DNA of 64,000 nt from Vitrella brassicaformis CCMP3155 (Eukaryota; Protista; Chromerida), in contig CDMY01000897.1 in NCBI GenBank assembly GCA_001179505.1, positions 176,741-240,740 of the forward strand, given 5' to 3'. Positions 34,893 to 46,873 of this stretch are shown in pieces. The position numbers and the translations under genes were made by a program. Below the pieces are notes generated by a model. The model saw nothing but the letters and a program-made list of their open reading frames with translations, was not told where the DNA came from and made no database searches. Position 1 is the stretch's first letter; each line of letters begins with the position of its first letter.

Positions 34893-35942
34893 TTATTCAC
34901 TGGAGCTCAGTTTGTTGAACCTCTCCATGCTGTCGCGCAGGTGCTGCGAAATGGCCGCCACGTCGGTGCCCAGCGTCACGAAACGGAAGTCTCTCTTTAC
35001 CATGTCGAGGGCGAATCCCGTCTCACCGCACCAGATGCCCGCCACCTTGCCCCTCTTGCTGCACTCCCGCCCGATCCTCTCGATGGCAGCCACCACCTTC
35101 GGATGGGTCGGCGCGCCTGACGGGGGGACGCCCAGCGCCAAACTCAGATCATTGGGACCTTTGGCGATCGGTCGACACACAAACATTGCAGCGATGAATG
35201 TACGAAGGGTCATTGTGGCTCGACTCACCAATGAAGGCCCCATCGACGCCCTCGACAGCCAGGATATCCTCGAGGTTGTCGAGACCTTGTTGGGTTTCGA
35301 TCATGACCAGCTTGACAATCAGCTCGTCCGCCATTCTCAGGTACTCGCCGCCGCCATAGACCATCCCCGCCCGCGTGGGGCCGAAGGAGCGGCTGCCTTT
35401 CGGGGGATACACGCACGCATCCACGAACGCACGGGCCTGCTCGGCGGTGTCCACCAATGGACAAATGAGACCTGGCCACAGCACAAACACAGAGAGAAGA
35501 GAAGCATACGTCGATGATGCACGCCGACTTGTCAAGTGACACTGAAGCGCGGACTTACCTAAGTAGCCTGCGTCGAGCAGCTTGTGTATCATCGATACGT
35601 CAGCAGCTGGCCACTGGTGCGGGATACGTGCCACTGGTGTGGGTGGATGGGCAGACAGAGCCGACACCATCTGCAGCGCATCGGAGAAGTCTATCATGCC
35701 ATGTCTGCACACATACGCGCGGAAGCAGACAGGCAGACAGAGGATGGATAGATGTGTGTGTTTGTCTATTGCTCCGAGTAGCTGGCGGTGAAGGATACTC
35801 ACTGCATGTCCACAACAGCCGCTGTGAGCCCCGCTGTCGTGGCGGCTGCCTCGGCGCTCAGCGTACTGGGGATGGCCAGCCACGCATGCGTGGCGACGCC
35901 GCCGCTGGACAGCACATCTCTCAGCGCACTTTGAAGCCTCAT
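34893..35942 (-). CDS. HpcH/HpaI-family class II pyruvate aldolase (GarL/RhmA-like)
   Basis: [79 protein letters not shown]. Confidence 0.92.
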
Positions 35943-36104
35943 CCAGGGGAAATCTGCACGACGCGCTGAGACCCAAGGGTTTGGTTAGGTTGCGCGAAAC
36001 GGGAGACGAAAGCGGTTGAACCTGCACCCGAAATGCAACAGCAGATCTGGCCATTGCGTGCCAGTGCCCTCTGATCTGGCTGCCGTGTGAGTGATCTCAA
36101 TCTC

Positions 36105-38273: not shown

Positions 38274-38573
38274 NNNNNNNNNNNNNNNNNNNNNNNNNNN
38301 NNNNNNNNNNNNNNNNNNNNNNNNNNNNNNNNNNNNNNNNNNNNNNNNNNNNNNNNNNNNNNNNNNNNNNNNNNNNNNNNNNNNNNNNNNNNNNNNNNNN
38401 NNNNNNNNNNNNNNNNNNNNNNNNNNNNNNNNNNNNNNNNNNNNNNNNNNNNNNNNNNNNNNNNNNNNNNNNNNNNNNNNNNNNNNNNNNNNNNNNNNNN
38501 NNNNNNNNNNNNNNNNNNNNNNNNNNNNNNNNNNNNNNNNNNNNNNNNNNNNNNNNNNNNNNNNNNNNNNNNN
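38274..38573. other. Assembly gap (300 N) flanked by poly-C
   Basis: N run with C homopolymers on both sides. Confidence 0.99.
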
Positions 38574-39082
38574 CCCCCCCCCCCCCTTGCCAACCAGACA
38601 AAGCACCCAGCCATTCGTTCGTGGGCGCAGCAAAATGGTATGCAGACAGGCAGGCAGGAAGGCAAGAAATAAGCAGGCGAATTCCAAAAGTAGCCGGCCA
38701 CAGATGCAGGCAGGCAGGCAGGCGGACAAGAGAGGGCAGTCTCGGGGCAATAAACTCAGGCGCATCCACCCATCCATCCATCCGTCCATCCACAGCGACA
38801 CAGCATATCCACGGCAGGAGCGTTAGCACTAGCGCAACCAACGAGTGAAAAATGACCTCGCGAGTGAGTCAGTGGGTGGGTGGTGACGGGTGTGGTGTGC
38901 ACACAATGGATTGGATGAATGCGTCCCGGAGGATCGACCGAACGACTGACTGTGTGGGTGGTGTGGTATGCAAGCACAGCATGACTGACGTGGGTGGCTG
39001 GGTGTGGTGCATGAGTGCAATGCAATGCACAGGGAGGGGGAAAAATGTCCGTACGTCGGTTGATGTCGCTCCTCCATCTTCA

Positions 39083-42000
39083 TCACACGTCGTGGGCCCA
39101 CTTCAACTTGGCGCTCTCGGCAGCACGGTCCAACATCGCCTGCAGGACAGGACAGGACAGGACACACCAACAGAACCAAACAGATCAGCCATCTCTCGTC
39201 ATGCATGTCTCTCTTTCCGCCCCCCACCCACCTGGCAGACACGTATGTCGACGAGCCCTTCCTCATCCACAGCACAGCTGAAGGAGCACTGCTGCACGCT
39301 ATCCGATGCCAGCGTCTCAAACGTGCTCAGCCCGTGCGACACCACATCAGACCCTACTGGAGCGCTCGTGGCGCCACTAGCCGTCACGGTGTCGAGCATG
39401 GAGGCGATCAGTGCATGGTGGTGCAGGGTGACGGACGACTCGAAGGCCGCAGATATGACCGACGGCACACCTGCTTTCGACGCGACGGAATGGAAGTCGA
39501 GGCATTTGTCGTAGCCGCCCAGGAGAGCCGGCTTCAGCACCAGCGCCGCCAGACCTTTCCCAAACAGACTCGGCAAATCCGACAGCCGGAAATGCTCTGT
39601 ATGGCAAGCAAAAGACAGCAGGCTCATGCACACATCCCCACGGGTAGTGGTGCTCCTTGCCGATGCCCACCTTGGTAGAGGCTCTCATCGAGTGCGAAGT
39701 GGACGCGTGTGGCCCTGTGGAAGACGGGCAGCAGCTGACAGTCGGCCAATGGCTCCTCGACGTACTCGATAAGGGCCAGCGACCGCTCACTCAGCTGCCG
39801 GAAGAAGGCGTCCGCCTCGCGCAGCAGCCACGCCTGGTTCGCATCCAGCCGGATCCTCGGCGCCACGCCGTCGCTGTCGGCCATGACGTCCTCGGCCATC
39901 TGGTTGACGCGCCTCGCGTCCTCTGCGGTTGACCTCCCGCCGACCTTGACCTTCACCACTGGATAGCGGACGCACCGCTCAGATGACGATGATGCGTCCC
40001 CGCCGATGGTGGCATGGCTGCGGACCCTGAGGCCGTTCAGATGGACATGGGAGCTCCGACTCGTCCCTGAGCGCATGCTCGTGACGAGCTCCGGAATGGC
40101 CTGTCCCCTCTCCCGAGCCAGCAGGTGGAGCACCGCCTGCTGCAGCCCCAGGCGCACCGACGGGACCACAGGCTGCCGACCGCCCTTGAGCGTCGTCACC
40201 CACGCGTCGAAGGCACGTGAGTCCCTGAGGGCCCCCAGCTGCCAGGGTATGTCCACACCCTGCTGTCCCGCAAGCCCGGTCAGCAGTGCTGCAGCCTCGC
40301 CGTGGGTCTCGTTGTGGAAGCCCGGCAGTGGACACACCTCGCCGATCCCAACGGTGCCTGCGGCGTTCCGCGCCAGGATGAGCCAGCCTCTCCGCTCCGT
40401 GATGGCGTCGAACTGACTCAGCTGCAGGGGCTGGGAGAGGTCCATCGTGAAGGGGACGATCGCCAGGCTATCAAGCACGGGGGCGGGGGAGGGGAGAGGT
40501 GGGGGCGGTGCTGCTGCTGCTGCCGCTGTGGCATCGTCGATGGCGACAAGTTGGTGTTTCTGCAAAAATGCGCCTATCGCCTGAGCGAGCCACGTGGGCT
40601 GCTCCTCCACCACAGCGTGGCCTGAATCAGCTGTCGCCACCTCCAGTCTTCGGCCCTCAATGCTGCTCTCGACAAGCTCCTCGCTGATGGCGTGATATCG
40701 CGCGTCGTGTCTGACATACGGACAGACACGGACAGACAGCACAGAGGAGAGAACACGTCGTAGGGCACTCATGCAGCTTGATCCTTGTGCCGTTGCTCGA
40801 TGACATACCTTCCTGCGATGAAGAGAGCAGGGCATGGCGGGTCCACGAGCGTCGGTCTCAGGTCTGGCTGGAGTGCAGCACTCATGCCACGGAGGGACGC
40901 TGCGGCCGCGCGCGGTGAGGTGCGACACCTCCTGCGGATGATGTCCGTGAGCAGAGCGGTGGTCGGCTGCTGATCGCTGTCTTCTAGGGGGCTACATGGG
41001 GCCGCCAGGGGGCCCCACATGGGCATGCTGTACCACTCAGACCGAAGGAAACGCTCGAACGCGCACCTGCACACGCACACGGATGACATGTATCACCTTG
41101 TCGACATGTTGTACTTCATGCCAACTTACCTGTCCATCGCTTCCACCCGGCCAGCAAGCACCTGTCCCTTGCAAAAGCGCTCATGGCGCTCCGCCGGGTC
41201 CGTCGCGCCTGGGTCGGCCGCAATGATGACCGCCGCACGAACGCGCTGAGGTGCTTTCTTCATGAGCTGCATCGCCAGCCGCCCGCCCATGGAATAGCCG
41301 ACCAGAATGGCGTCGGTGATGCCTTCGCTGGCCAGCAGGTCAAGCAGAGAGGTGGTGACGACGTCAGGTGTGTGTGCCAGGCTGGCAGCCAGCCCCTCTG
41401 CAGCAGATCGGGTCCCGCCGTGCCCCAACAAGTCGACAGCGAACAGGCCCACACACTGTCCGCCTGCCTGCTGCGTCAGAGATGCGATGACCGTCCGCCA
41501 GTCGTCCTTTGACCCCAGCCAGCCGTGGAGGAAGACCACCGTGGGGCTGTCGCGGCACCCTCCACGCCACCAACACCAGCGTATGCTTCTCGCCAGGTGC
41601 GTCACGACTGCATCACCAGCCGCCCTCTGGATGTCCCGATGGATGCTCACGTTGCTCTCTCTGTCCGTGCACACTGCCTCAATCACTCGCGGGAAGGCCG
41701 ACTTGCCACTTACTGCGGCACTCAGCTCTTCGGATGTCTTGACCCGCGAGTATGGCAGGCCGACGCTCGCACAGATGCCCTCGAAGCTGACGTCGTGTGG
41801 GGTGTCGAAGAGAGGCGAGAAGACGTCCTTGTGTGCCGCGATGGGGAGGAAGTGAAAAATGCCGCCGCCGCCGTTGTTGACGACCACGACCGACACGGAC
41901 GCGCCGCTTTGCTTAAGGGTGTGCAGCCCACCCATGTCATGCAGGGCCGCCACATCACCCAGCAACACCGTCACAGGCTGCCCCAGGCCGAGGGAGTAGC

Positions 42001-45000
42001 CGATGGCGCTGTGAAGAACCCCATCGATGCCGTTGGCCCCTCTGTTGGACGCAACGCACCCCACAGGCCCTTCGTCTGACCTGCCGACATCGGGTGCGGT
42101 GGCGATGGCGTCAGGCAGCGATCCGAACGAGTCGGCGTCTCTGATGGGCATGCTGCTGGAGAGGAAGAGGCCACCGGTGCTCTGGGCGGAGCTTGCCGCG
42201 AGTCGGGCCACCTCAGGCTCACACAGCGCAGCCGAGGACGACGACCCGTCACCGCTCTCGCCTTCTTGCGCCTTCAAGAAATTGGCCGCTCCGGCGATCG
42301 CGATTGAAGTGAGGTCCGCCAGACCACAGAGCTCGCTCGCGTGGGCGACTTCACTGATGGCAGCCGGCCGGGCGACGTCGTCGAGGGCCTCCACGAAGGA
42401 GGCGATCGAGCATGTCAGCTGGTGGGTCATCACCGCATCTGGGTCGTGACAGTGAGGCTCGGGAGAGACCACGATGGTGGCAGCTTCGTTTGCTGTCTTC
42501 TTCATGGCGGTCTCGATGAGCGCATACATCCGTTTGGACGTCAGGGGGATCCCCAGCTGCAGCACCAGGTCCGTCCGCAGGTGGTGGGTGATGAAAGGGC
42601 ACCCTGCCAGCAGCAAGTCGGCAGCCGCGACGTGCTCGATCTTCTCGGCCGCCTGCTTGTTGTGCTCGTCGATGGGACCGCGAAGAGAGGAGGTGATGTC
42701 CGTCACAACAGGCCATCCGAGTTGCCCAACAAGCCAGATGGCGGCTTGCACATCGCCCTCTCTCCATTGCCCTCCACCGGCCACCACCAGGCCCCTCCTG
42801 CTACTCGAAAGTAGCGAGAGGACCTCGCTGGCGGCATCTCGCGACATCCCGCCGCCTTCGCCGGGCACGTATATGGCGTAGGGCGAGCACGACTGCTGCC
42901 ATTTCGCGAGCCGCTCGTCGCCATGACCGAAACCATCCAGGCATCCGTGCGACCAGGTCGACGCCAGGCCCGGCGTGCCGCGGACGGGGCCGCCGTCTGG
43001 TGCGAGGTTCTCGCGGAAAGGGAGGTTGAGCTGGACGGGCCCCTTGCCGCCCCCCTTGGCACCCTCTGCATGCGCCACGGCGCAGTCGACGTCGGCCAGT
43101 AGGTGACTGAGGGCGATGTGGTCGGTGGGGCAGCTCACGTCCTTCATCCACCGCACGTACTTGCCGAATATGTCGGGCTGCCAGATGGTCTGCATGCTCC
43201 CTCGGCCACGCAGCTCCGGCGGCCGATCAGCTGTGCAGAGCACCATCGGCAGCCCCGCCTGCCACGCCTCCACCACACCCGGATACAGATTCGCCACGGC
43301 AGTGCCAGAAGACACCACTATCACCGCCGCACGCCCCGTCGCCCGGGCATACCCCACACCCATGAATGCCGCCCCCCGCTCGTCGTGGACCGACGTGGTC
43401 ACCCTGGCGGCCAGTGGATGGCGTGCAAGGGCCGTGACAATCGGCGATGACCGCGATCCAGGAGCGACGAAGAAGCGCGAGATGCCGAGACGCAGGAACT
43501 CTTCGACAATGGCCACGCCCCCCATGGTGTTGATGTTGGGTGCGCTGCGCAAGCGGAGGGCGAGAGGGTGGGCGGGAGGTCCGAGGACCTCGACGAAGTT
43601 CCTCATCTTCACTGCCGTCTCGCGCCACTCGCCGCTCGCTGTGGACCCCGGCACGATGCCCGCACCCGCGAAGACATGCACTACACTCGACGGCCGGCGA
43701 CCGCTGTCATCTGGCCGGATGAGCGCCGACCGGATGGCGACGGCGAACTCGCTGCCCGTGGCTGCCACATAGCCGACCGGTCCTGCGTAAAAGCCCCGGT
43801 CGAAGTCCTCAAGGCGCCGCACCGCATCGGCAGCGATGCCCTTGGGCAGCCCACACACGGCCGCTGTTGGGTGCAGGCCATGCATGAGCCGCACGCCCAG
43901 GCGGAGCAGGCCCGAGTTGGATTGGCCGCCCCTGTCGGCCCTGTCGGTCACATCGGTGGGTGGCGCGTATGACCTCAGGGCCTGCTGGAGGTTGAGGCGC
44001 ACGGTCCTGAAGAGGTGCTGCACGTGCTTGAGCTGCTTGACCTGCAGGGATGACACCACCAGCTGCTGCGACAAGTCTGCCGGCGGCCTGGCGACCGCAC
44101 GGGCGGCCTCTGGCGACTGGAACGAGTCGCCGATGGTCGTCTCGGACTCGCTGCTGATGAAGCTCTGACCGGTGGGACTCGGGGCCGTCCGGGGGCTGTC
44201 CAGAATGCCCTCAGTCGACTGGTCGTCCTGTTGCCGGGGCGGCGGCTGGCAGGGGTCTGCCGAGTCGTGCAGACACGTGTCGAGCTGCGTGAGAGCCACT
44301 TGGATGCTCTCGAGGGTCAGGTCGAGCTCTGTGCGGTCCTTGGGGTCCTCCATCAGCTCACGCGCCAATGCATCATCTTGCTCCTGAAATGCACACACAC
44401 AAGAGCAGGCAGGCAGAATGTTGGGGACCGCTACGGCACGTGTTCGGCTACGATATCACCTTTGTCGCCCCCCGTGGCCTGGTGCCAGCAAGTGCCACGG
44501 TGGACAGCTGCTGCTGCCGAACACTCAGCAACTGCTCTGGCGTGCACCCAACAAAGCCGACAGATGCCCTGGGCTTCAGACACAACAAGTACCTGCACAC
44601 CGAACACCCACGCATCAGTGGTGGCTCTTCTGGCTTCTACGCATCCATTGTGTATGCGGCATACCCAGTGGTAGCTCGCGTCGATCCATACAGCTGCAGC
44701 AGGATATCCAGAGGCTCGAGGGCATCAGGGAACTTCAGCTGCACCGACCGAGCCAGCACCGTCTGAAATGCACGAACAAGACGACACGTCAATATCAGCT
44801 GCTCGAAGCTCTCTGGATGGCGTCATTTCTCACCTTTTTGTATTTGCCATCGGTGATATCCTGTAGTGCCGTGTTGATGGCCGCCGTCCACCTCTCGAAG
44901 GCCTCGCCGCTCTCTTCGTCGAGCGGCCGATGGGGCGGGAGGGGAGGCGGCAGACAATACGGAGGCCGCAGAACACGATCAAACTCATAACTCATCTGAA

Positions 45001-45851
45001 CCAGACAGGCGGACAGCATACAAACAGGCACCCAGTGAGGTGAGTTTCTGCAAATGCCGATCCAGAGGTCACCCCCCTCTCACCTGATGCAGCGCTTCCA
45101 GTGCCTTCCTGCGGCTCTGCCTCCACGTGAGCAGCGCTTCCTCGCCATCCTCAGCAATCGTGTCGCCACCGTCCCTCTTCCTCCTGTCGCGGTCATCACC
45201 CGCCCTCCACCGCAGTGTGAGGCTCAACGTCCACTCATACGGTTCCCGTGACCGACAACTCACTGGGTCTTCACTCCTGCGGGCCTCGTCGGTCCTCCTC
45301 TCGTTAGAAAAATCCACCTCTCGTGCTGAGCTGCCTTGCCTGTGAGATGCCGCCGCCGCTGCTGCCGTTGCGGTTCTGTGTGGTGCGGTGCGCCTGAGTT
45401 CGATAAGAGGGAGGAAGAAGAAGTGGTCTTGGAAGGCCTCCCACTCCTTGTCCCGCTCAGCCGTCACGTCGAACCGCTCGCCGCCGTAGTAGTGCACTGC
45501 GGTGGGCGCCTCCACCTGCACGTCACTCTCCGCCAGCCGTCCATTGCCCGTAATGAGGTGCGCCGCGCCAACGCCTGCCGCCACGAGGTCGCCAGAGGGG
45601 TTGGAAAAATACACCTGAGGGTGCAGGGACTGATTGCGGAGCCAGATGATCGCGTCACGAGCATTCTGGACCGCCACCGAGCACTCCCATCGACATACGC
45701 CACTCGAGAACGGCGCAGCAGTTGCATGGGTGGCAGACAGGGCGTCCTTGAGCAGCCGTCGGGCCTTCCACAGAGGCACAGGGACTGAGCTGACGGGCAC
45801 GGACGCTCCCCCCTCCTTGAGGACCGCTTGTGGGACTGCATTCTCCCCCAT
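39083..45851 (-). CDS. PHYLLO-like multifunctional naphthoquinone biosynthesis protein, domain order MenF-MenD-MenH-MenC
   Basis: MenF: KK-TVLAR, GCTPEQL, ALAGTRPRG, LHPTAAVCGLP, DRGFYAGPVG, FAVAIRSAL, FAGAGIVPGS...EWRET. MenD: APGSRSSP, HDERGAAF, SSGTAVAN, TADRPPEL, SNRGANGIDG, LGDVAALHD, NNGGGGIF. MenH: FLHGWLG, GYSMGGR, SGHAVVEEQP. MenC: GEVCPLPG, VKVKVG, RLDANQAW, EYVEEP, ALDESL, VLKP. Confidence 0.93.
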
Positions 45852-46046
45852 AAAGTCTCCGATAAAAGGGCGGCTTGCAACCGCTTTGGCAGATGTCAGC
45901 TGAAGTGTGGATTGCGCATTGAGAAGCGTTGCTGCGCTCCAGCGTTGCTGGCAACGCTTGCGTGGATTCCCCTTTGTGGATCGTCTGGCTTCAAGCTCGC
46001 GTCGACCGCGGCATTTCGTTGCGAGCGTGGCCAAGGCTAACCAACA

Positions 46047-46873
46047 ATGGCAGTTGGCCCTGTGGGTGTCCTCGGCAGAGTGTTCTTCGTAAGCGAGATC
46101 ACCACCGTCATGAATGAAGCGGAGCCGATGCGTGTACGTGTGCTGTGTGTGTGTTTCAGATAATCATCTTCATCCTCGGAAACGTCAGATCTCTCATGGT
46201 GGGCTCCTGTGCGCGTCAGATGCGTCACCGTTCACTGGGTGTTTCTGTGTCTGTTGCAGAAATGGGAGCTCAGCATCAACCAGCCTCTCAAGGCAGGGTG
46301 GGCGATGAGGAAGCATCTATGCAAAACCGCCGTCTCAACTGGTGTGTCGTTATGCAGGGTTCCTGCTGAGTACGCTCCTGCGATTGTGGTTGGGACGGCT
46401 GTGCTGGCCTTCCTGGGCTCACTCTGCATCCTTTTCGGACAGATGAAGCCGGGGTGAGGCACGACTGCGGAGGGAATCATGCATCTATCATGGAAACATG
46501 TCGTGTGTGTGTGCGCCAGTGCCGCGTGCTACACGGTGTTCCTGATCATTGTGGGCTTCACAAAGCACTACGGAGACTACTTGGCGGCCGAGGGAGACCC
46601 GCAGCAGCAGTGGATGACAATCGTCCAGGCACGCCTCACTCACTCAGTCTCACACGTCGATAAACCAAACACGCACTTGTTGTGTTTCTCTCTGCGCGTG
46701 AATGTGTATGGCTCGCCAGGTGTGCAAGAATTTGGCGCTGGTCGGTGCGTGCCTGATGTTCGTCGACTACGATAGCCAAATCAGAAAGCTCCAGGCTAAG
46801 GTAAGGCGAGTGACTCACAAAGTGCAAGCTGGATCAAGGTCTGGCTTACCGTCAGGAGAAGAAGAAGGAGTGA
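46047..46873 (+). CDS. Small polytopic membrane protein, HR-lesion/DoxX/SURF4-like, with C-terminal dilysine ER-retrieval signal
   Basis: MAVGPVGVLGRVFF|IIIFILG...hydrophobic helices...KNLALVGACLMF...KEKKKE*. Confidence 0.65.

What the first reader, a model, noticed from the sequence alone, without database searches (positions are those of the whole stretch)
39083..45851. PHYLLO-like tetrafunctional enzyme with rearranged domain order MenF-MenD-MenH-MenC
Seen: one spliced reading frame of about 1,900 aa. The MenF-MenD and MenD-MenH junctions lie inside a single exon (about 41130-44387). The MenH catalytic His (SGHAVVEEQP) and the MenC start (LDSLAIVPF...GEVCPLPG) share another exon, so the H-then-C order does not depend on my splice choices. 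Known: plant/green algal PHYLLO is MenF-MenD-MenC-MenH, while E. coli-type operons run menF-menD-menH-menB-menC-menE. Inference: F-D-H-C follows both the reaction order (ICS, SEPHCHC synthase, SHCHC synthase, OSB synthase) and the bacterial operon order minus menB. This points to an independent fusion or an operon-derived transfer, and possibly substrate channelling.
Basis: partly seen in the sequence, partly recalled or inferred. Interest (0 to 1): 0.85.

Follow-up and report, generated by a model that had tools for sequence, protein, structure and literature searches.

The report
Vitrella's diatom-type vitamin K fusion gene
This alga's gene really does join four vitamin K1-pathway enzymes in the order MenF-MenD-MenH-MenC, but that order is the usual one in diatoms, brown algae, cryptophytes, Chromera and Euglena and was published for diatoms in 2008, so the finding is ordinary.

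Summary
On the minus strand, 45851 to 39083, nine exons encode one 2,044-aa protein. It is identical to GenBank CEM36643.1 (UniProt A0A0G4GZP4) of Vitrella brassicaformis CCMP3155. Spliced contigs of run X4 support seven of the eight GT-AG introns; the eighth is inferred and matches the deposited model. Pfam gives the order Chorismate_bind, ThDP enzyme, alpha/beta hydrolase, MenC_N/MR_MLE_C, which is F-D-H-C. The expected catalytic residues of all four modules are present.

Gross et al. 2008 (PMC2412073) already describe menFDCH in green algae and moss and menFDHC-duf in diatoms. In my survey every named non-green fusion is F-D-H-C: Teleaulax, Triparma, Fistulifera, Scytosiphon, Ectocarpus, Chromera and Euglena. 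Every named green one is F-D-C-H.

In a concatenated MenD+MenH+MenC tree, Vitrella is sister to Chromera (100/99). The domain order changes once on the whole tree (100/100). Single-domain trees give the same split.

So this is the chromerid ortholog of the known diatom-type PHYLLO without the diatom C-terminal domain, not a separate fusion or transfer. Whether the two orders arose by one rearrangement or two fusions remains open. The protein's location in the cell is unresolved, because the model has no obvious signal peptide.

The parts
39083..45851 (-). Whole coding region of the PHYLLO-type gene: 9 exons, 8 GT-AG introns of 63-98 nt, 2,044 codons plus TGA. It equals GenBank CEM36643.1.
   Evidence: Spliced model. 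100% identity to P0218 over 2,044 aa. Accession and organism.
45084..45851 (-). Exon 1 (aa 1-256): start codon ATG at 45851-45849 and the MenF N-terminal region. The intron after it (44996-45083, 88 nt) is inferred.
   Evidence: tblastn of homologs and NCBIfam MenF N-terminal hit. The donor and acceptor were inferred from frame and GT..AG, and the result agrees with the deposited model. I did not check this intron against RNA contigs.
44834..44995 (-). Exon 2 (aa 257-310). It ends with the MenF catalytic Lys310, which aligns with E. coli K190.
   Evidence: X4 joint 44763-44833. Alignment to E. coli MenF 2eua. Coordinates.
44665..44762 (-). Exon 3 (aa 311-342).
   Evidence: X4 joints on both sides.
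44460..44592 (-). Exon 4 (aa 343-387). It holds MenF Glu362, which aligns with E. coli E240.
   Evidence: X4 joints. Alignment. Coordinates.
41130..44383 (-). Exon 5 (aa 388-1471). It carries the rest of MenF (to about aa 655), all of MenD (about aa 670-1290; Glu722; GD1197...NN1223 ThDP motif) and the N-terminal half of MenH with the nucleophile Ser1418 in GYSMGG. Both the F-D and the D-H junctions lie in this exon.
   Evidence: Pfam and NCBIfam. X4 contig record 7 is colinear across it. PDB alignments. Coordinates.
40809..41066 (-). Exon 6 (aa 1472-1557): the middle (lid) part of MenH.
   Evidence: X4 joints 41067-41129 and 40711-40808. Alignment to MenH structures.
39671..40710 (-). Exon 7 (aa 1558-1904). 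It carries the MenH Asp1560 and His1589, an Ala/Pro-rich linker of about 25 aa, the MenC capping domain, and barrel residues K1811/K1813, D1847, E1877 and D1899. The H-C junction lies inside this exon.
   Evidence: X4 contigs records 6 and 7.
39232..39596 (-). Exon 8 (aa 1905-2026): MenC C-terminal part with Lys1926, which aligns with E. coli OSBS K235.
   Evidence: X4 joints. NCBIfam. Alignment to 1fhu/3gc2.
39083..39139 (-). Exon 9 (aa 2027-2044) and the TGA stop at 39085-39083. No further domain follows.
   Evidence: X4 joint 39140-39231. Stop located. No match to the diatom Polyketide_cyc tail anywhere in the window.

Best explanation
This is the Vitrella brassicaformis ortholog of the 'diatom-type' PHYLLO gene. 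One expressed, spliced nuclear gene encodes a single polypeptide with four enzyme modules in pathway order:
- isochorismate synthase (MenF),
- SEPHCHC synthase (MenD, ThDP-dependent),
- SHCHC synthase (MenH, Ser-Asp-His hydrolase fold),
- o-succinylbenzoate synthase (MenC, enolase superfamily).

Together they would convert chorismate plus 2-oxoglutarate into o-succinylbenzoate, the first four steps towards the phylloquinone used by photosystem I.

The F-D-H-C order was not created in Vitrella. It is inherited: Chromera, cryptophytes, stramenopiles and Euglena share it. Vitrella's version differs from the diatom one only in lacking the C-terminal Polyketide_cyc (COG5637) module.

Shown here: the gene structure, expression as one spliced reading frame, the domain order, intact catalytic residues, and the phylogenetic position. 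Inferred: the four enzyme activities, the end product, and the location in the cell.
For: Gene and transcript:
- Seven GT-AG introns are removed in contigs of run X4, while runs X1 and X3 are colinear with the genome.
- The spliced frame is one open frame of 2,044 aa, identical to CEM36643.1.

Domain order:
- Pfam on the full protein gives Chorismate_bind 290-650, TPP_enzyme_N 677-787, TPP_M_2 877-1053, TPP_C 1179-1279, Abhydrolase_6 1336-1602, MenC_N 1660-1700 and MR_MLE_C 1807-1973.
- NCBIfam gives menD, isochor_syn, menH_SHCHC and menC.

Catalytic residues, aligned to solved MenF, MenD, MenH and OSBS structures, are all present.

Sharing of the order:
- Literature: menFDHC-duf in diatoms (PMC2412073); MenD-MenH-MenC in Guillardia (PMC9244630).
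- Survey: F-D-H-C(+K) in Teleaulax, Triparma, Fistulifera, Scytosiphon, Ectocarpus, Chromera Cvel_13927 and Euglena EG_transcript_121. F-D-C-H in all named green algae and plants.

Trees:
- Concatenated D+H+C (careful IQ-TREE, 41 rows x 1150 columns): Vitrella+Chromera 100/99. F-D-C-H lies on one side of a branch at 100/100, and the order changes once in 100% of bootstrap trees.
- The MenC tree (98) and MenH tree (98) each split all F-D-H-C types from green plus bacterial sequences. The MenD tree (99) splits bacteria plus green from all F-D-H-C types plus red-algal MenF-MenD fusions.
Against: - No enzyme activity or phylloquinone measurement was made for Vitrella here.
- The 5' end was not checked with reads. 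The deposited start (MGENAV...) leaves no room for the bipartite plastid leader expected in a chromerid, and the frame has no ATG further upstream. An upstream exon may be missing, or the protein may not enter the plastid.
- Vitrella's position among the non-green lineages, beyond its pairing with Chromera, is weakly supported (82/69).
- Bacterial sampling in the trees is thin and limited to the best hits.
- Run X4 carries no RNA label. I call it RNA only because its contigs lack the introns.
Confidence: 0.9

Rival explanations
1. An independent gene fusion, or a fresh transfer of a bacterial menF-menD-menH-(menB)-menC operon, happened in Vitrella or the chromerid ancestor.
For: The order is colinear with the reaction order. 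It is also colinear with the E. coli-type operon minus menB (operon order from general knowledge; Gross 2008 lists the genes of the cluster but not this order). The nearest homologs are only 37-46% identical.
Against: The same order occurs in Chromera, cryptophytes, stramenopiles and Euglena and was published for diatoms in 2008. Vitrella's D, H and C domains fall inside the eukaryotic F-D-H-C clade, not with bacteria. The gene has eight spliceosomal introns. No bacterial four-module fusion appeared among the best 150 of about 25,000 hits.
Confidence: 0.03
2. This is a deeper version of the same idea and is compatible with Vitrella having inherited its gene. The F-D-H-C type and the green F-D-C-H type would be two separate fusions of an operon-derived men cluster, not one fusion followed by a swap of the H and C modules.
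For: The two orders never mix. They sit on opposite sides of one branch in the concatenated tree (100/100) and in the MenH and MenC trees; in the MenD tree all F-D-H-C types again lie opposite green. Many red-algal models are F-D only, with no H or C module on the same polypeptide (Gracilariopsis, Chondrus, Pyropia; 30 representatives), so partial fusions exist. Proteins with only MenD-MenH also exist. Cenci et al. 2018 could not resolve the history of PHYLLO.
Against: With only three groups (bacteria, green, non-green), the unrooted trees cannot separate two fusions from one fusion plus one rearrangement. The shared F-D junction in all eukaryotic forms is most simply explained by a single F-D fusion. 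Gross 2008 reports PHYLLO genes as monophyletic in Plantae and chromalveolates.
Confidence: 0.3
3. The gene model is an artefact: two neighbouring genes (MenF-MenD-MenH and MenC) were wrongly joined.
For: Automatic models of long multi-domain genes are often wrong. Contigs cannot by themselves prove a single transcript (caveat printed).
Against: The MenH catalytic Asp and His and the MenC N-terminal domain lie in one uninterrupted exon with no stop between them. X4 contig record 7 runs from MenD through MenH into MenC with the introns removed. The same architecture is found in intronless single ORFs on eukaryotic metagenome contigs (L003, L004).
Confidence: 0.02

Closest known systems
Diatom PHYLLO (menFDHC-duf; Thalassiosira pseudonana, Phaeodactylum tricornutum; Gross, Meurer and Bhattacharya 2008, PMC2412073), represented here by Fistulifera solaris GAX16420.1 (P0231)
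   Same: Nuclear single-polypeptide fusion with the same MenF-MenD-MenH-MenC order. It lies on the same side of the deep split in the MenD, MenH, MenC and concatenated trees.
   Different: Diatoms and their relatives carry a fifth, C-terminal Polyketide_cyc/COG5637 module, which forms one clade (99/97). Vitrella stops 18 codons into its last exon, shortly after MenC, and the window holds no such module. Identity is only about 38%.
Chromera velia Cvel_13927 (UniProt A0A0G4IF37, P0256)
   Same: The other chromerid alga. Same F-D-H-C order by Pfam. Sister to the Vitrella protein with 100/99 support.
   Different: 2,769 aa against 2,044 aa, with long insertions. Only 25-34% identity per aligned block. 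Long branch.
Plant and green-algal PHYLLO (Arabidopsis, Chlamydomonas, Physcomitrium; Gross et al. 2006 and 2008)
   Same: The same four (or three and a half) enzyme modules fused in one protein, making o-succinylbenzoate for phylloquinone. Homologous throughout.
   Different: The order is MenF-MenD-MenC-MenH. In vascular plants the MenF module is truncated and separate ICS genes supply the activity. These proteins lie on the other side of the 100/100 branch.
Cryptophyte PHYLLO (Teleaulax amphioxeia EP00802_P000826, P0131; Guillardia theta ID 72208, PMC9244630)
   Same: F-D-H-C order without the Polyketide_cyc tail. Among the nearest named relatives in every tree. It also starts without an obvious signal peptide (PMC6260743 says the same for the Guillardia men proteins).
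   Different: About 40% identity. In Guillardia the published models split MenF, and possibly a MenH, into neighbouring gene models.
Bacterial men operon (E. coli menF-menD-menH-menB-menC-menE; order from general knowledge)
   Same: The same four enzymes in the same relative order. The catalytic residues align one for one with the solved bacterial enzymes.
   Different: The bacterial genes are separate polypeptides with menB between menH and menC. The Vitrella gene is one spliced eukaryotic reading frame and does not branch with bacteria.

Membership tests
PHYLLO (eukaryotic MenF/MenD/MenH/MenC fusion protein) | All four Men modules on one polypeptide encoded by one nuclear gene | tested here: met
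   One open spliced frame of 2,044 aa. Pfam and NCBIfam find all four modules. RNA-type contigs have the introns removed.
PHYLLO (eukaryotic MenF/MenD/MenH/MenC fusion protein) | Common descent with other eukaryotic PHYLLO proteins rather than with a bacterial lineage | tested here: met
   The MenD, MenH, MenC and concatenated trees place it among eukaryotic fusions, sister to Chromera. Bacterial sampling was limited.
PHYLLO (eukaryotic MenF/MenD/MenH/MenC fusion protein) | Catalytic residues of each module intact | tested here: met
   MenF K310, E362, E406, E639. MenD E722 and GD...NN. MenH S1418, D1560, H1589. MenC K1811/K1813, D1847, E1877, D1899, K1926. All aligned to solved structures. 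Residue roles are from published work on the E. coli and B. subtilis enzymes (my knowledge).
PHYLLO (eukaryotic MenF/MenD/MenH/MenC fusion protein) | Converts chorismate to o-succinylbenzoate and is needed for phylloquinone | not testable with these tools
   Needs enzyme assays, complementation or a knock-out. For context only: the Chromera PSI structure was modelled with two phylloquinones (PMC12830998).
PHYLLO (eukaryotic MenF/MenD/MenH/MenC fusion protein) | Plastid targeting presequence (plant PHYLLO is chloroplastic) | tested here: inconclusive
   The model starts about 25 aa before the conserved MenF N-terminal element. There is no hydrophobic stretch in the first 60 aa (Kyte-Doolittle heuristic only) and no in-frame ATG upstream. 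The 5' end was not covered by laid contigs. Euglena PHYLLO is reported as apparently cytosolic (PMC7580956), and the Guillardia men proteins lack signal peptides (PMC6260743).
Green/plant-type PHYLLO (menFDCH) | Module order MenF-MenD-MenC-MenH | tested here: not met
   In Vitrella the hydrolase (aa 1336-1602) comes before MenC (aa 1660-1973).
Diatom-type PHYLLO (menFDHC-duf) | Module order MenF-MenD-MenH-MenC | tested here: met
   Definition from PMC2412073.
Diatom-type PHYLLO (menFDHC-duf) | Fifth C-terminal module (COG5637 / Polyketide_cyc) | tested here: not met
   The stop codon follows shortly after MenC. tblastn with two diatom-type tails finds nothing in the 64-kb window. The tail is also absent in Chromera and Teleaulax, and was not detected in Triparma or Euglena.

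The most novel reading that the evidence does not exclude
The F-D-H-C proteins form one clade. It spans chromerids, cryptophytes, stramenopiles and even Euglena, whose plastid is of green origin. It could be a second, independent, operon-colinear fusion, distinct from the green F-D-C-H PHYLLO, that spread with or between complex algae. Several of its members start without a signal peptide, Vitrella's among them. In that case these members would make o-succinylbenzoate in the cytosol, next to the cytosolic shikimate pathway that I recall being reported for apicomplexan relatives, rather than in the plastid.
Probability: 0.2. Interest if true: 0.45.

Novelty: new member of a known kind. Interest (0 to 1): 0.15.

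Why it matters
Very little in itself. It adds the two chromerid algae to the list of organisms with the diatom-type PHYLLO, and it gives a proper name to a deposited protein that is labelled only 'unnamed protein product' or 'mandelate racemase ... domain-containing protein'.

It has some modest uses:
- It shows that the closest photosynthetic relatives of apicomplexans have the complete front half of the vitamin K1 pathway in one gene. This is a useful reference point for the debated reports of phylloquinone and menaquinone in Plasmodium (PMC9069557), where bioinformatic searches have not found these genes.
- The clean split between the two domain orders, together with F-D-only red-algal proteins and leaderless N-termini in several lineages, marks out a small open question: how many times was the fusion assembled, and where in the cell does it work?

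Tried and rejected
- A diatom-like fifth module. tblastn of two Polyketide_cyc tails against the whole window found only chance hits (E above 0.8). The reading frame ends at 39083.
- A downstream extension of the gene. X4 contig record 6 runs 2,569 nt beyond 38900, but the frame has already stopped. The region holds an assembly gap (about 38280-38560), a plus-strand ORF with no Pfam hit, and an HpcH/HpaI aldolase-like ORF. I read this as 3' UTR and/or a neighbouring transcript merged in an unstranded assembly.
- An upstream exon with a signal peptide. No in-frame ATG lies between the upstream stop (about 46166) and 45851. The 82-aa ORF at 46232-46480 has no Pfam hit and is not signal-peptide-like.
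- The 'joint' 40530-43555 seen in X1 and X4. It rests on 22-nt matches of unrelated contigs with 397 foreign letters between them, so I dismissed it as a short repeat.
- A search for stand-alone or MenH-MenC two-domain relatives with the H-C exon. It gave only 8 hits, mostly bacterial MenC. The arrangement of MenH and MenC in red algae therefore stays unknown.
- A search with the Teleaulax protein for long named homologs. It gave only 21 hits. The representative search was far more useful.
- Taxon names for the best metagenomic hits P0193 and P0194. None are on record. Their contigs are clearly eukaryotic, intron-poor and syntenic with each other.
- Literature searches for the Vitrella and Chromera accessions and for Vitrella plus phylloquinone found no paper describing this gene.
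- Earlier findings of this scan held nothing on men genes.
Full report
**What is in the sequence**

The feature lies on the minus strand. A mechanical ORF list and profile scans of the open frames show a run of pieces:
- A weak MenF N-terminal match in 45069-46034.
- In the 1,090-aa frame 41126-44398, in order: the C-terminal part of Chorismate_bind (E 1e-28), a complete MenD (TIGR00173, E 1e-90, with TPP_enzyme_N, TPP_M_2 and TPP_C), and the first half of MenH (TIGR03695, E 7e-27).
- A weak MenH middle piece in 40769-41089.
- The MenH C-terminus followed by MenC_N and MR_MLE_C in 39624-40928 (menC TIGR01927, E 2e-23).
- The MenC C-terminus in 39199-39633.

**Gene model and expression**

Public runs that hold the long exon were found. 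Contigs of four of them were laid on 38900-44899.
- Runs X1 and X3 give single contigs colinear with the window, so they behave as genomic DNA.
- Run X4 (2013) gives contigs that skip seven short stretches, each bounded by GT..AG on the minus strand: 44763-44833, 44593-44664, 44384-44459, 41067-41129, 40711-40808, 39597-39670 and 39140-39231. I therefore take X4 to be a transcriptome, although its record carries no such label.
- One X4 contig (record 7) runs without a break from MenD through MenH into MenC. It overlaps the next contig (record 6), which reaches past the stop codon.

Removing these introns gives one open frame of 1,812 codons ending at TGA 39085-39083. One more intron, 44996-45083 (GTGAGA...CAG, 88 nt, correct phase), was inferred from frame and homology. 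It joins the frame to exon 1.

The product that starts at the ATG at 45851 is 2,044 aa. It is 100% identical along its whole length to P0218, found by the exhaustive representative search. P0218 is GenBank CEM36643.1 / UniProt A0A0G4GZP4, 'unnamed protein product [Vitrella brassicaformis CCMP3155]'. This also confirms the organism name that earlier notes of this scan had given.

- Exon 41130-44383 contains both the F-D and the D-H junctions.
- Exon 39671-40710 contains the MenH Asp and His, a short Ala/Pro-rich linker, and the MenC N-terminal domain.

**Is the enzyme likely to work?**

Pfam on the full protein gives this order:
- Chorismate_bind, aa 290-650
- TPP_enzyme_N, 677-787
- TPP_enzyme_M_2, 877-1053
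- TPP_enzyme_C, 1179-1279
- Abhydrolase_6, 1336-1602
- MenC_N, 1660-1700
- MR_MLE_C, 1807-1973

I aligned each module to solved structures and mapped the residues to window coordinates. The residues known to do the chemistry in the bacterial enzymes are all present. The residue roles come from my knowledge of the published E. coli and B. subtilis work.
- MenF: Lys310 and Glu362 (E. coli K190 and E240), and the Mg-binding glutamates 406 and 639.
- MenD: Glu722 and the GD(X)25NN ThDP motif.
- MenH: Ser1418 in GYSMGG, Asp1560 and His1589.
- MenC: the KxK pair 1811/1813, Asp1847, Glu1877, Asp1899 and Lys1926.

The activities themselves are inferred, not shown.

**Is the order unusual?**

No. [quoted passage not shown] With a C-terminal domain of unknown function (COG5637), this gives 'men FDHC duf'. 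A 2022 paper describes the Guillardia theta PHYLLO as MenD, MenH, MenC (PMC9244630).

I checked this independently. I located each module with phmmer in every protein fetched and with Pfam in the key ones. Among the 50%-identity representatives in the best 150 hits of the exhaustive search, the counts were:

| Architecture | Representatives |
|---|---|
| F-D-H-C + Polyketide_cyc | 14 |
| F-D-H-C | 8 |
| D-H-C + Polyketide_cyc | 1 |
| F-D-C-H | 14 |
| D-C-H | 5 |
| F-D only | 30 |
| MenD alone | 60 |

Every fusion for which a source gives a species name follows the same rule:
- F-D-H-C (with or without the tail): Teleaulax (cryptophyte), Triparma (bolidophyte), Fistulifera (diatom, with tail), Scytosiphon and Ectocarpus (brown algae), Chromera velia Cvel_13927, and Euglena gracilis EG_transcript_121.
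- F-D-C-H or D-C-H: Physcomitrium, Adiantum, Diphasiastrum, Setaria, Parachlorella, Elliptochloris and other plants.
- F-D only: the red algae Gracilariopsis, Chondrus and Pyropia.

**Phylogeny**

- MenD tree (97 rows, quick search): a 99% SH-aLRT branch separates bacteria plus green F-D-C-H from red-algal F-D plus all F-D-H-C types, Vitrella included.
- MenC tree: a 98% branch unites all 27 F-D-H-C-type domains, Vitrella included, against green and bacterial MenC.
- MenH tree: a 98% branch separates green plus bacterial MenD-MenH proteins from all F-D-H-C types.
- Concatenated MenD+MenH+MenC alignment (41 eukaryotic fusions, 1,150 columns, careful IQ-TREE with LG+C20 PMSF): Vitrella is sister to Chromera (ultrafast bootstrap 100, SH-aLRT 99). 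All F-D-C-H proteins lie on one side of a branch (100/100). The order changes exactly once in 100% of bootstrap trees. The Polyketide_cyc tail marks a single stramenopile clade (99/97).

Vitrella's position relative to cryptophytes and stramenopiles is not resolved (82/69).

A Vitrella- or chromerid-specific fusion, or a recent operon transfer, is not supported. The eight spliceosomal introns also argue against a recent transfer.

**What remains open**

1. The trees have only three groups (bacteria, green, non-green) and no reliable root. They cannot say whether F-D-H-C (colinear with the bacterial operon) or F-D-C-H is ancestral, or whether the two arose as separate fusions on top of a shared F-D fusion. 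The F-D-only red-algal proteins and the MenD-MenH two-domain proteins show that partial fusions exist. Cenci et al. 2018 (PMC6189191) also left the history of PHYLLO unresolved.
2. The location in the cell is uncertain. The deposited start leaves only about 25 residues before the conserved MenF N-terminal element. There is no hydrophobic stretch (a simple Kyte-Doolittle scan, not a trained predictor) and no in-frame ATG upstream. The Chromera, Teleaulax, Triparma, Fistulifera and Euglena models look the same. The literature reports an apparently cytosolic PHYLLO in Euglena (PMC7580956) and men proteins without signal peptides in Guillardia (PMC6260743). I could not check the 5' end with reads, because the single read-laying run did not reach it.

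**Verdict**

The gene is the chromerid member of a known, published architecture, and it is already in the public databases, though without a meaningful name. No paper in the searchable library mentions the Vitrella or Chromera accessions. Interest is low.

Noticed in passing
P0242 (Euglena gracilis EG_transcript_121); trees: Euglena's plastid is of green-algal origin, yet its PHYLLO has the F-D-H-C order (Pfam). It groups with unnamed F-D-H-C sequences (P0055, P0326) rather than with green F-D-C-H proteins (99/98). This suggests a non-green source for the gene.
   Followed up: partly
P0015, P0017, P0049 and 30 representatives labelled FD: Red-algal proteins (Gracilariopsis, Chondrus, Pyropia) of about 1,100-1,600 aa carry only MenF-MenD. 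Where their MenH and MenC are encoded was not found. One search returned almost only bacterial MenC.
   Followed up: partly
L003:10001-15973 and L004:10001-15859 (proteins P0193, P0194): The best non-self hits are intronless F-D-H-C ORFs of about 1,950-1,990 aa on two syntenic eukaryotic metagenome contigs. Their neighbours are FHA-WD40, an IGPS-PRAI fusion, GH9, GBP and Mito_carr genes. The organism is an unidentified intron-poor eukaryote. In the concatenated tree they group with Teleaulax (91/86).
   Followed up: partly
P0077, P0099, P0102, P0279: Two-domain MenD-MenH proteins of about 850-890 aa exist. They sit on the green/bacterial side of the MenH tree, but their taxon is not on record. 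They would be a fused D-H pair outside the four-module proteins.
   Followed up: no
window 38280-38560 and flanks: There is an assembly gap (a run of N) about 500 nt downstream of the stop codon. Short G/C runs and TGGA-type microsatellites (read as GWMDGWMDGW in translation) flank it. X4 transcript contig record 6 extends 2,569 nt beyond 38900 into or across this region.
   Followed up: partly
window 35149-36054 (-): An ORF piece with an HpcH/HpaI aldolase / citrate lyase domain (Pfam E 3e-12). It is probably an exon of the next gene downstream and unrelated to the men pathway.
   Followed up: partly
P0218 aa 1-60 (window 45672-45851) and the same region of P0256, P0131, P0231, P0201, P0242: The PHYLLO models of Vitrella, Chromera, Teleaulax, Fistulifera, Triparma and Euglena all begin without a hydrophobic signal-peptide-like stretch. 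One diatom model (P0202) has one. This is a heuristic scan only.
   Followed up: partly
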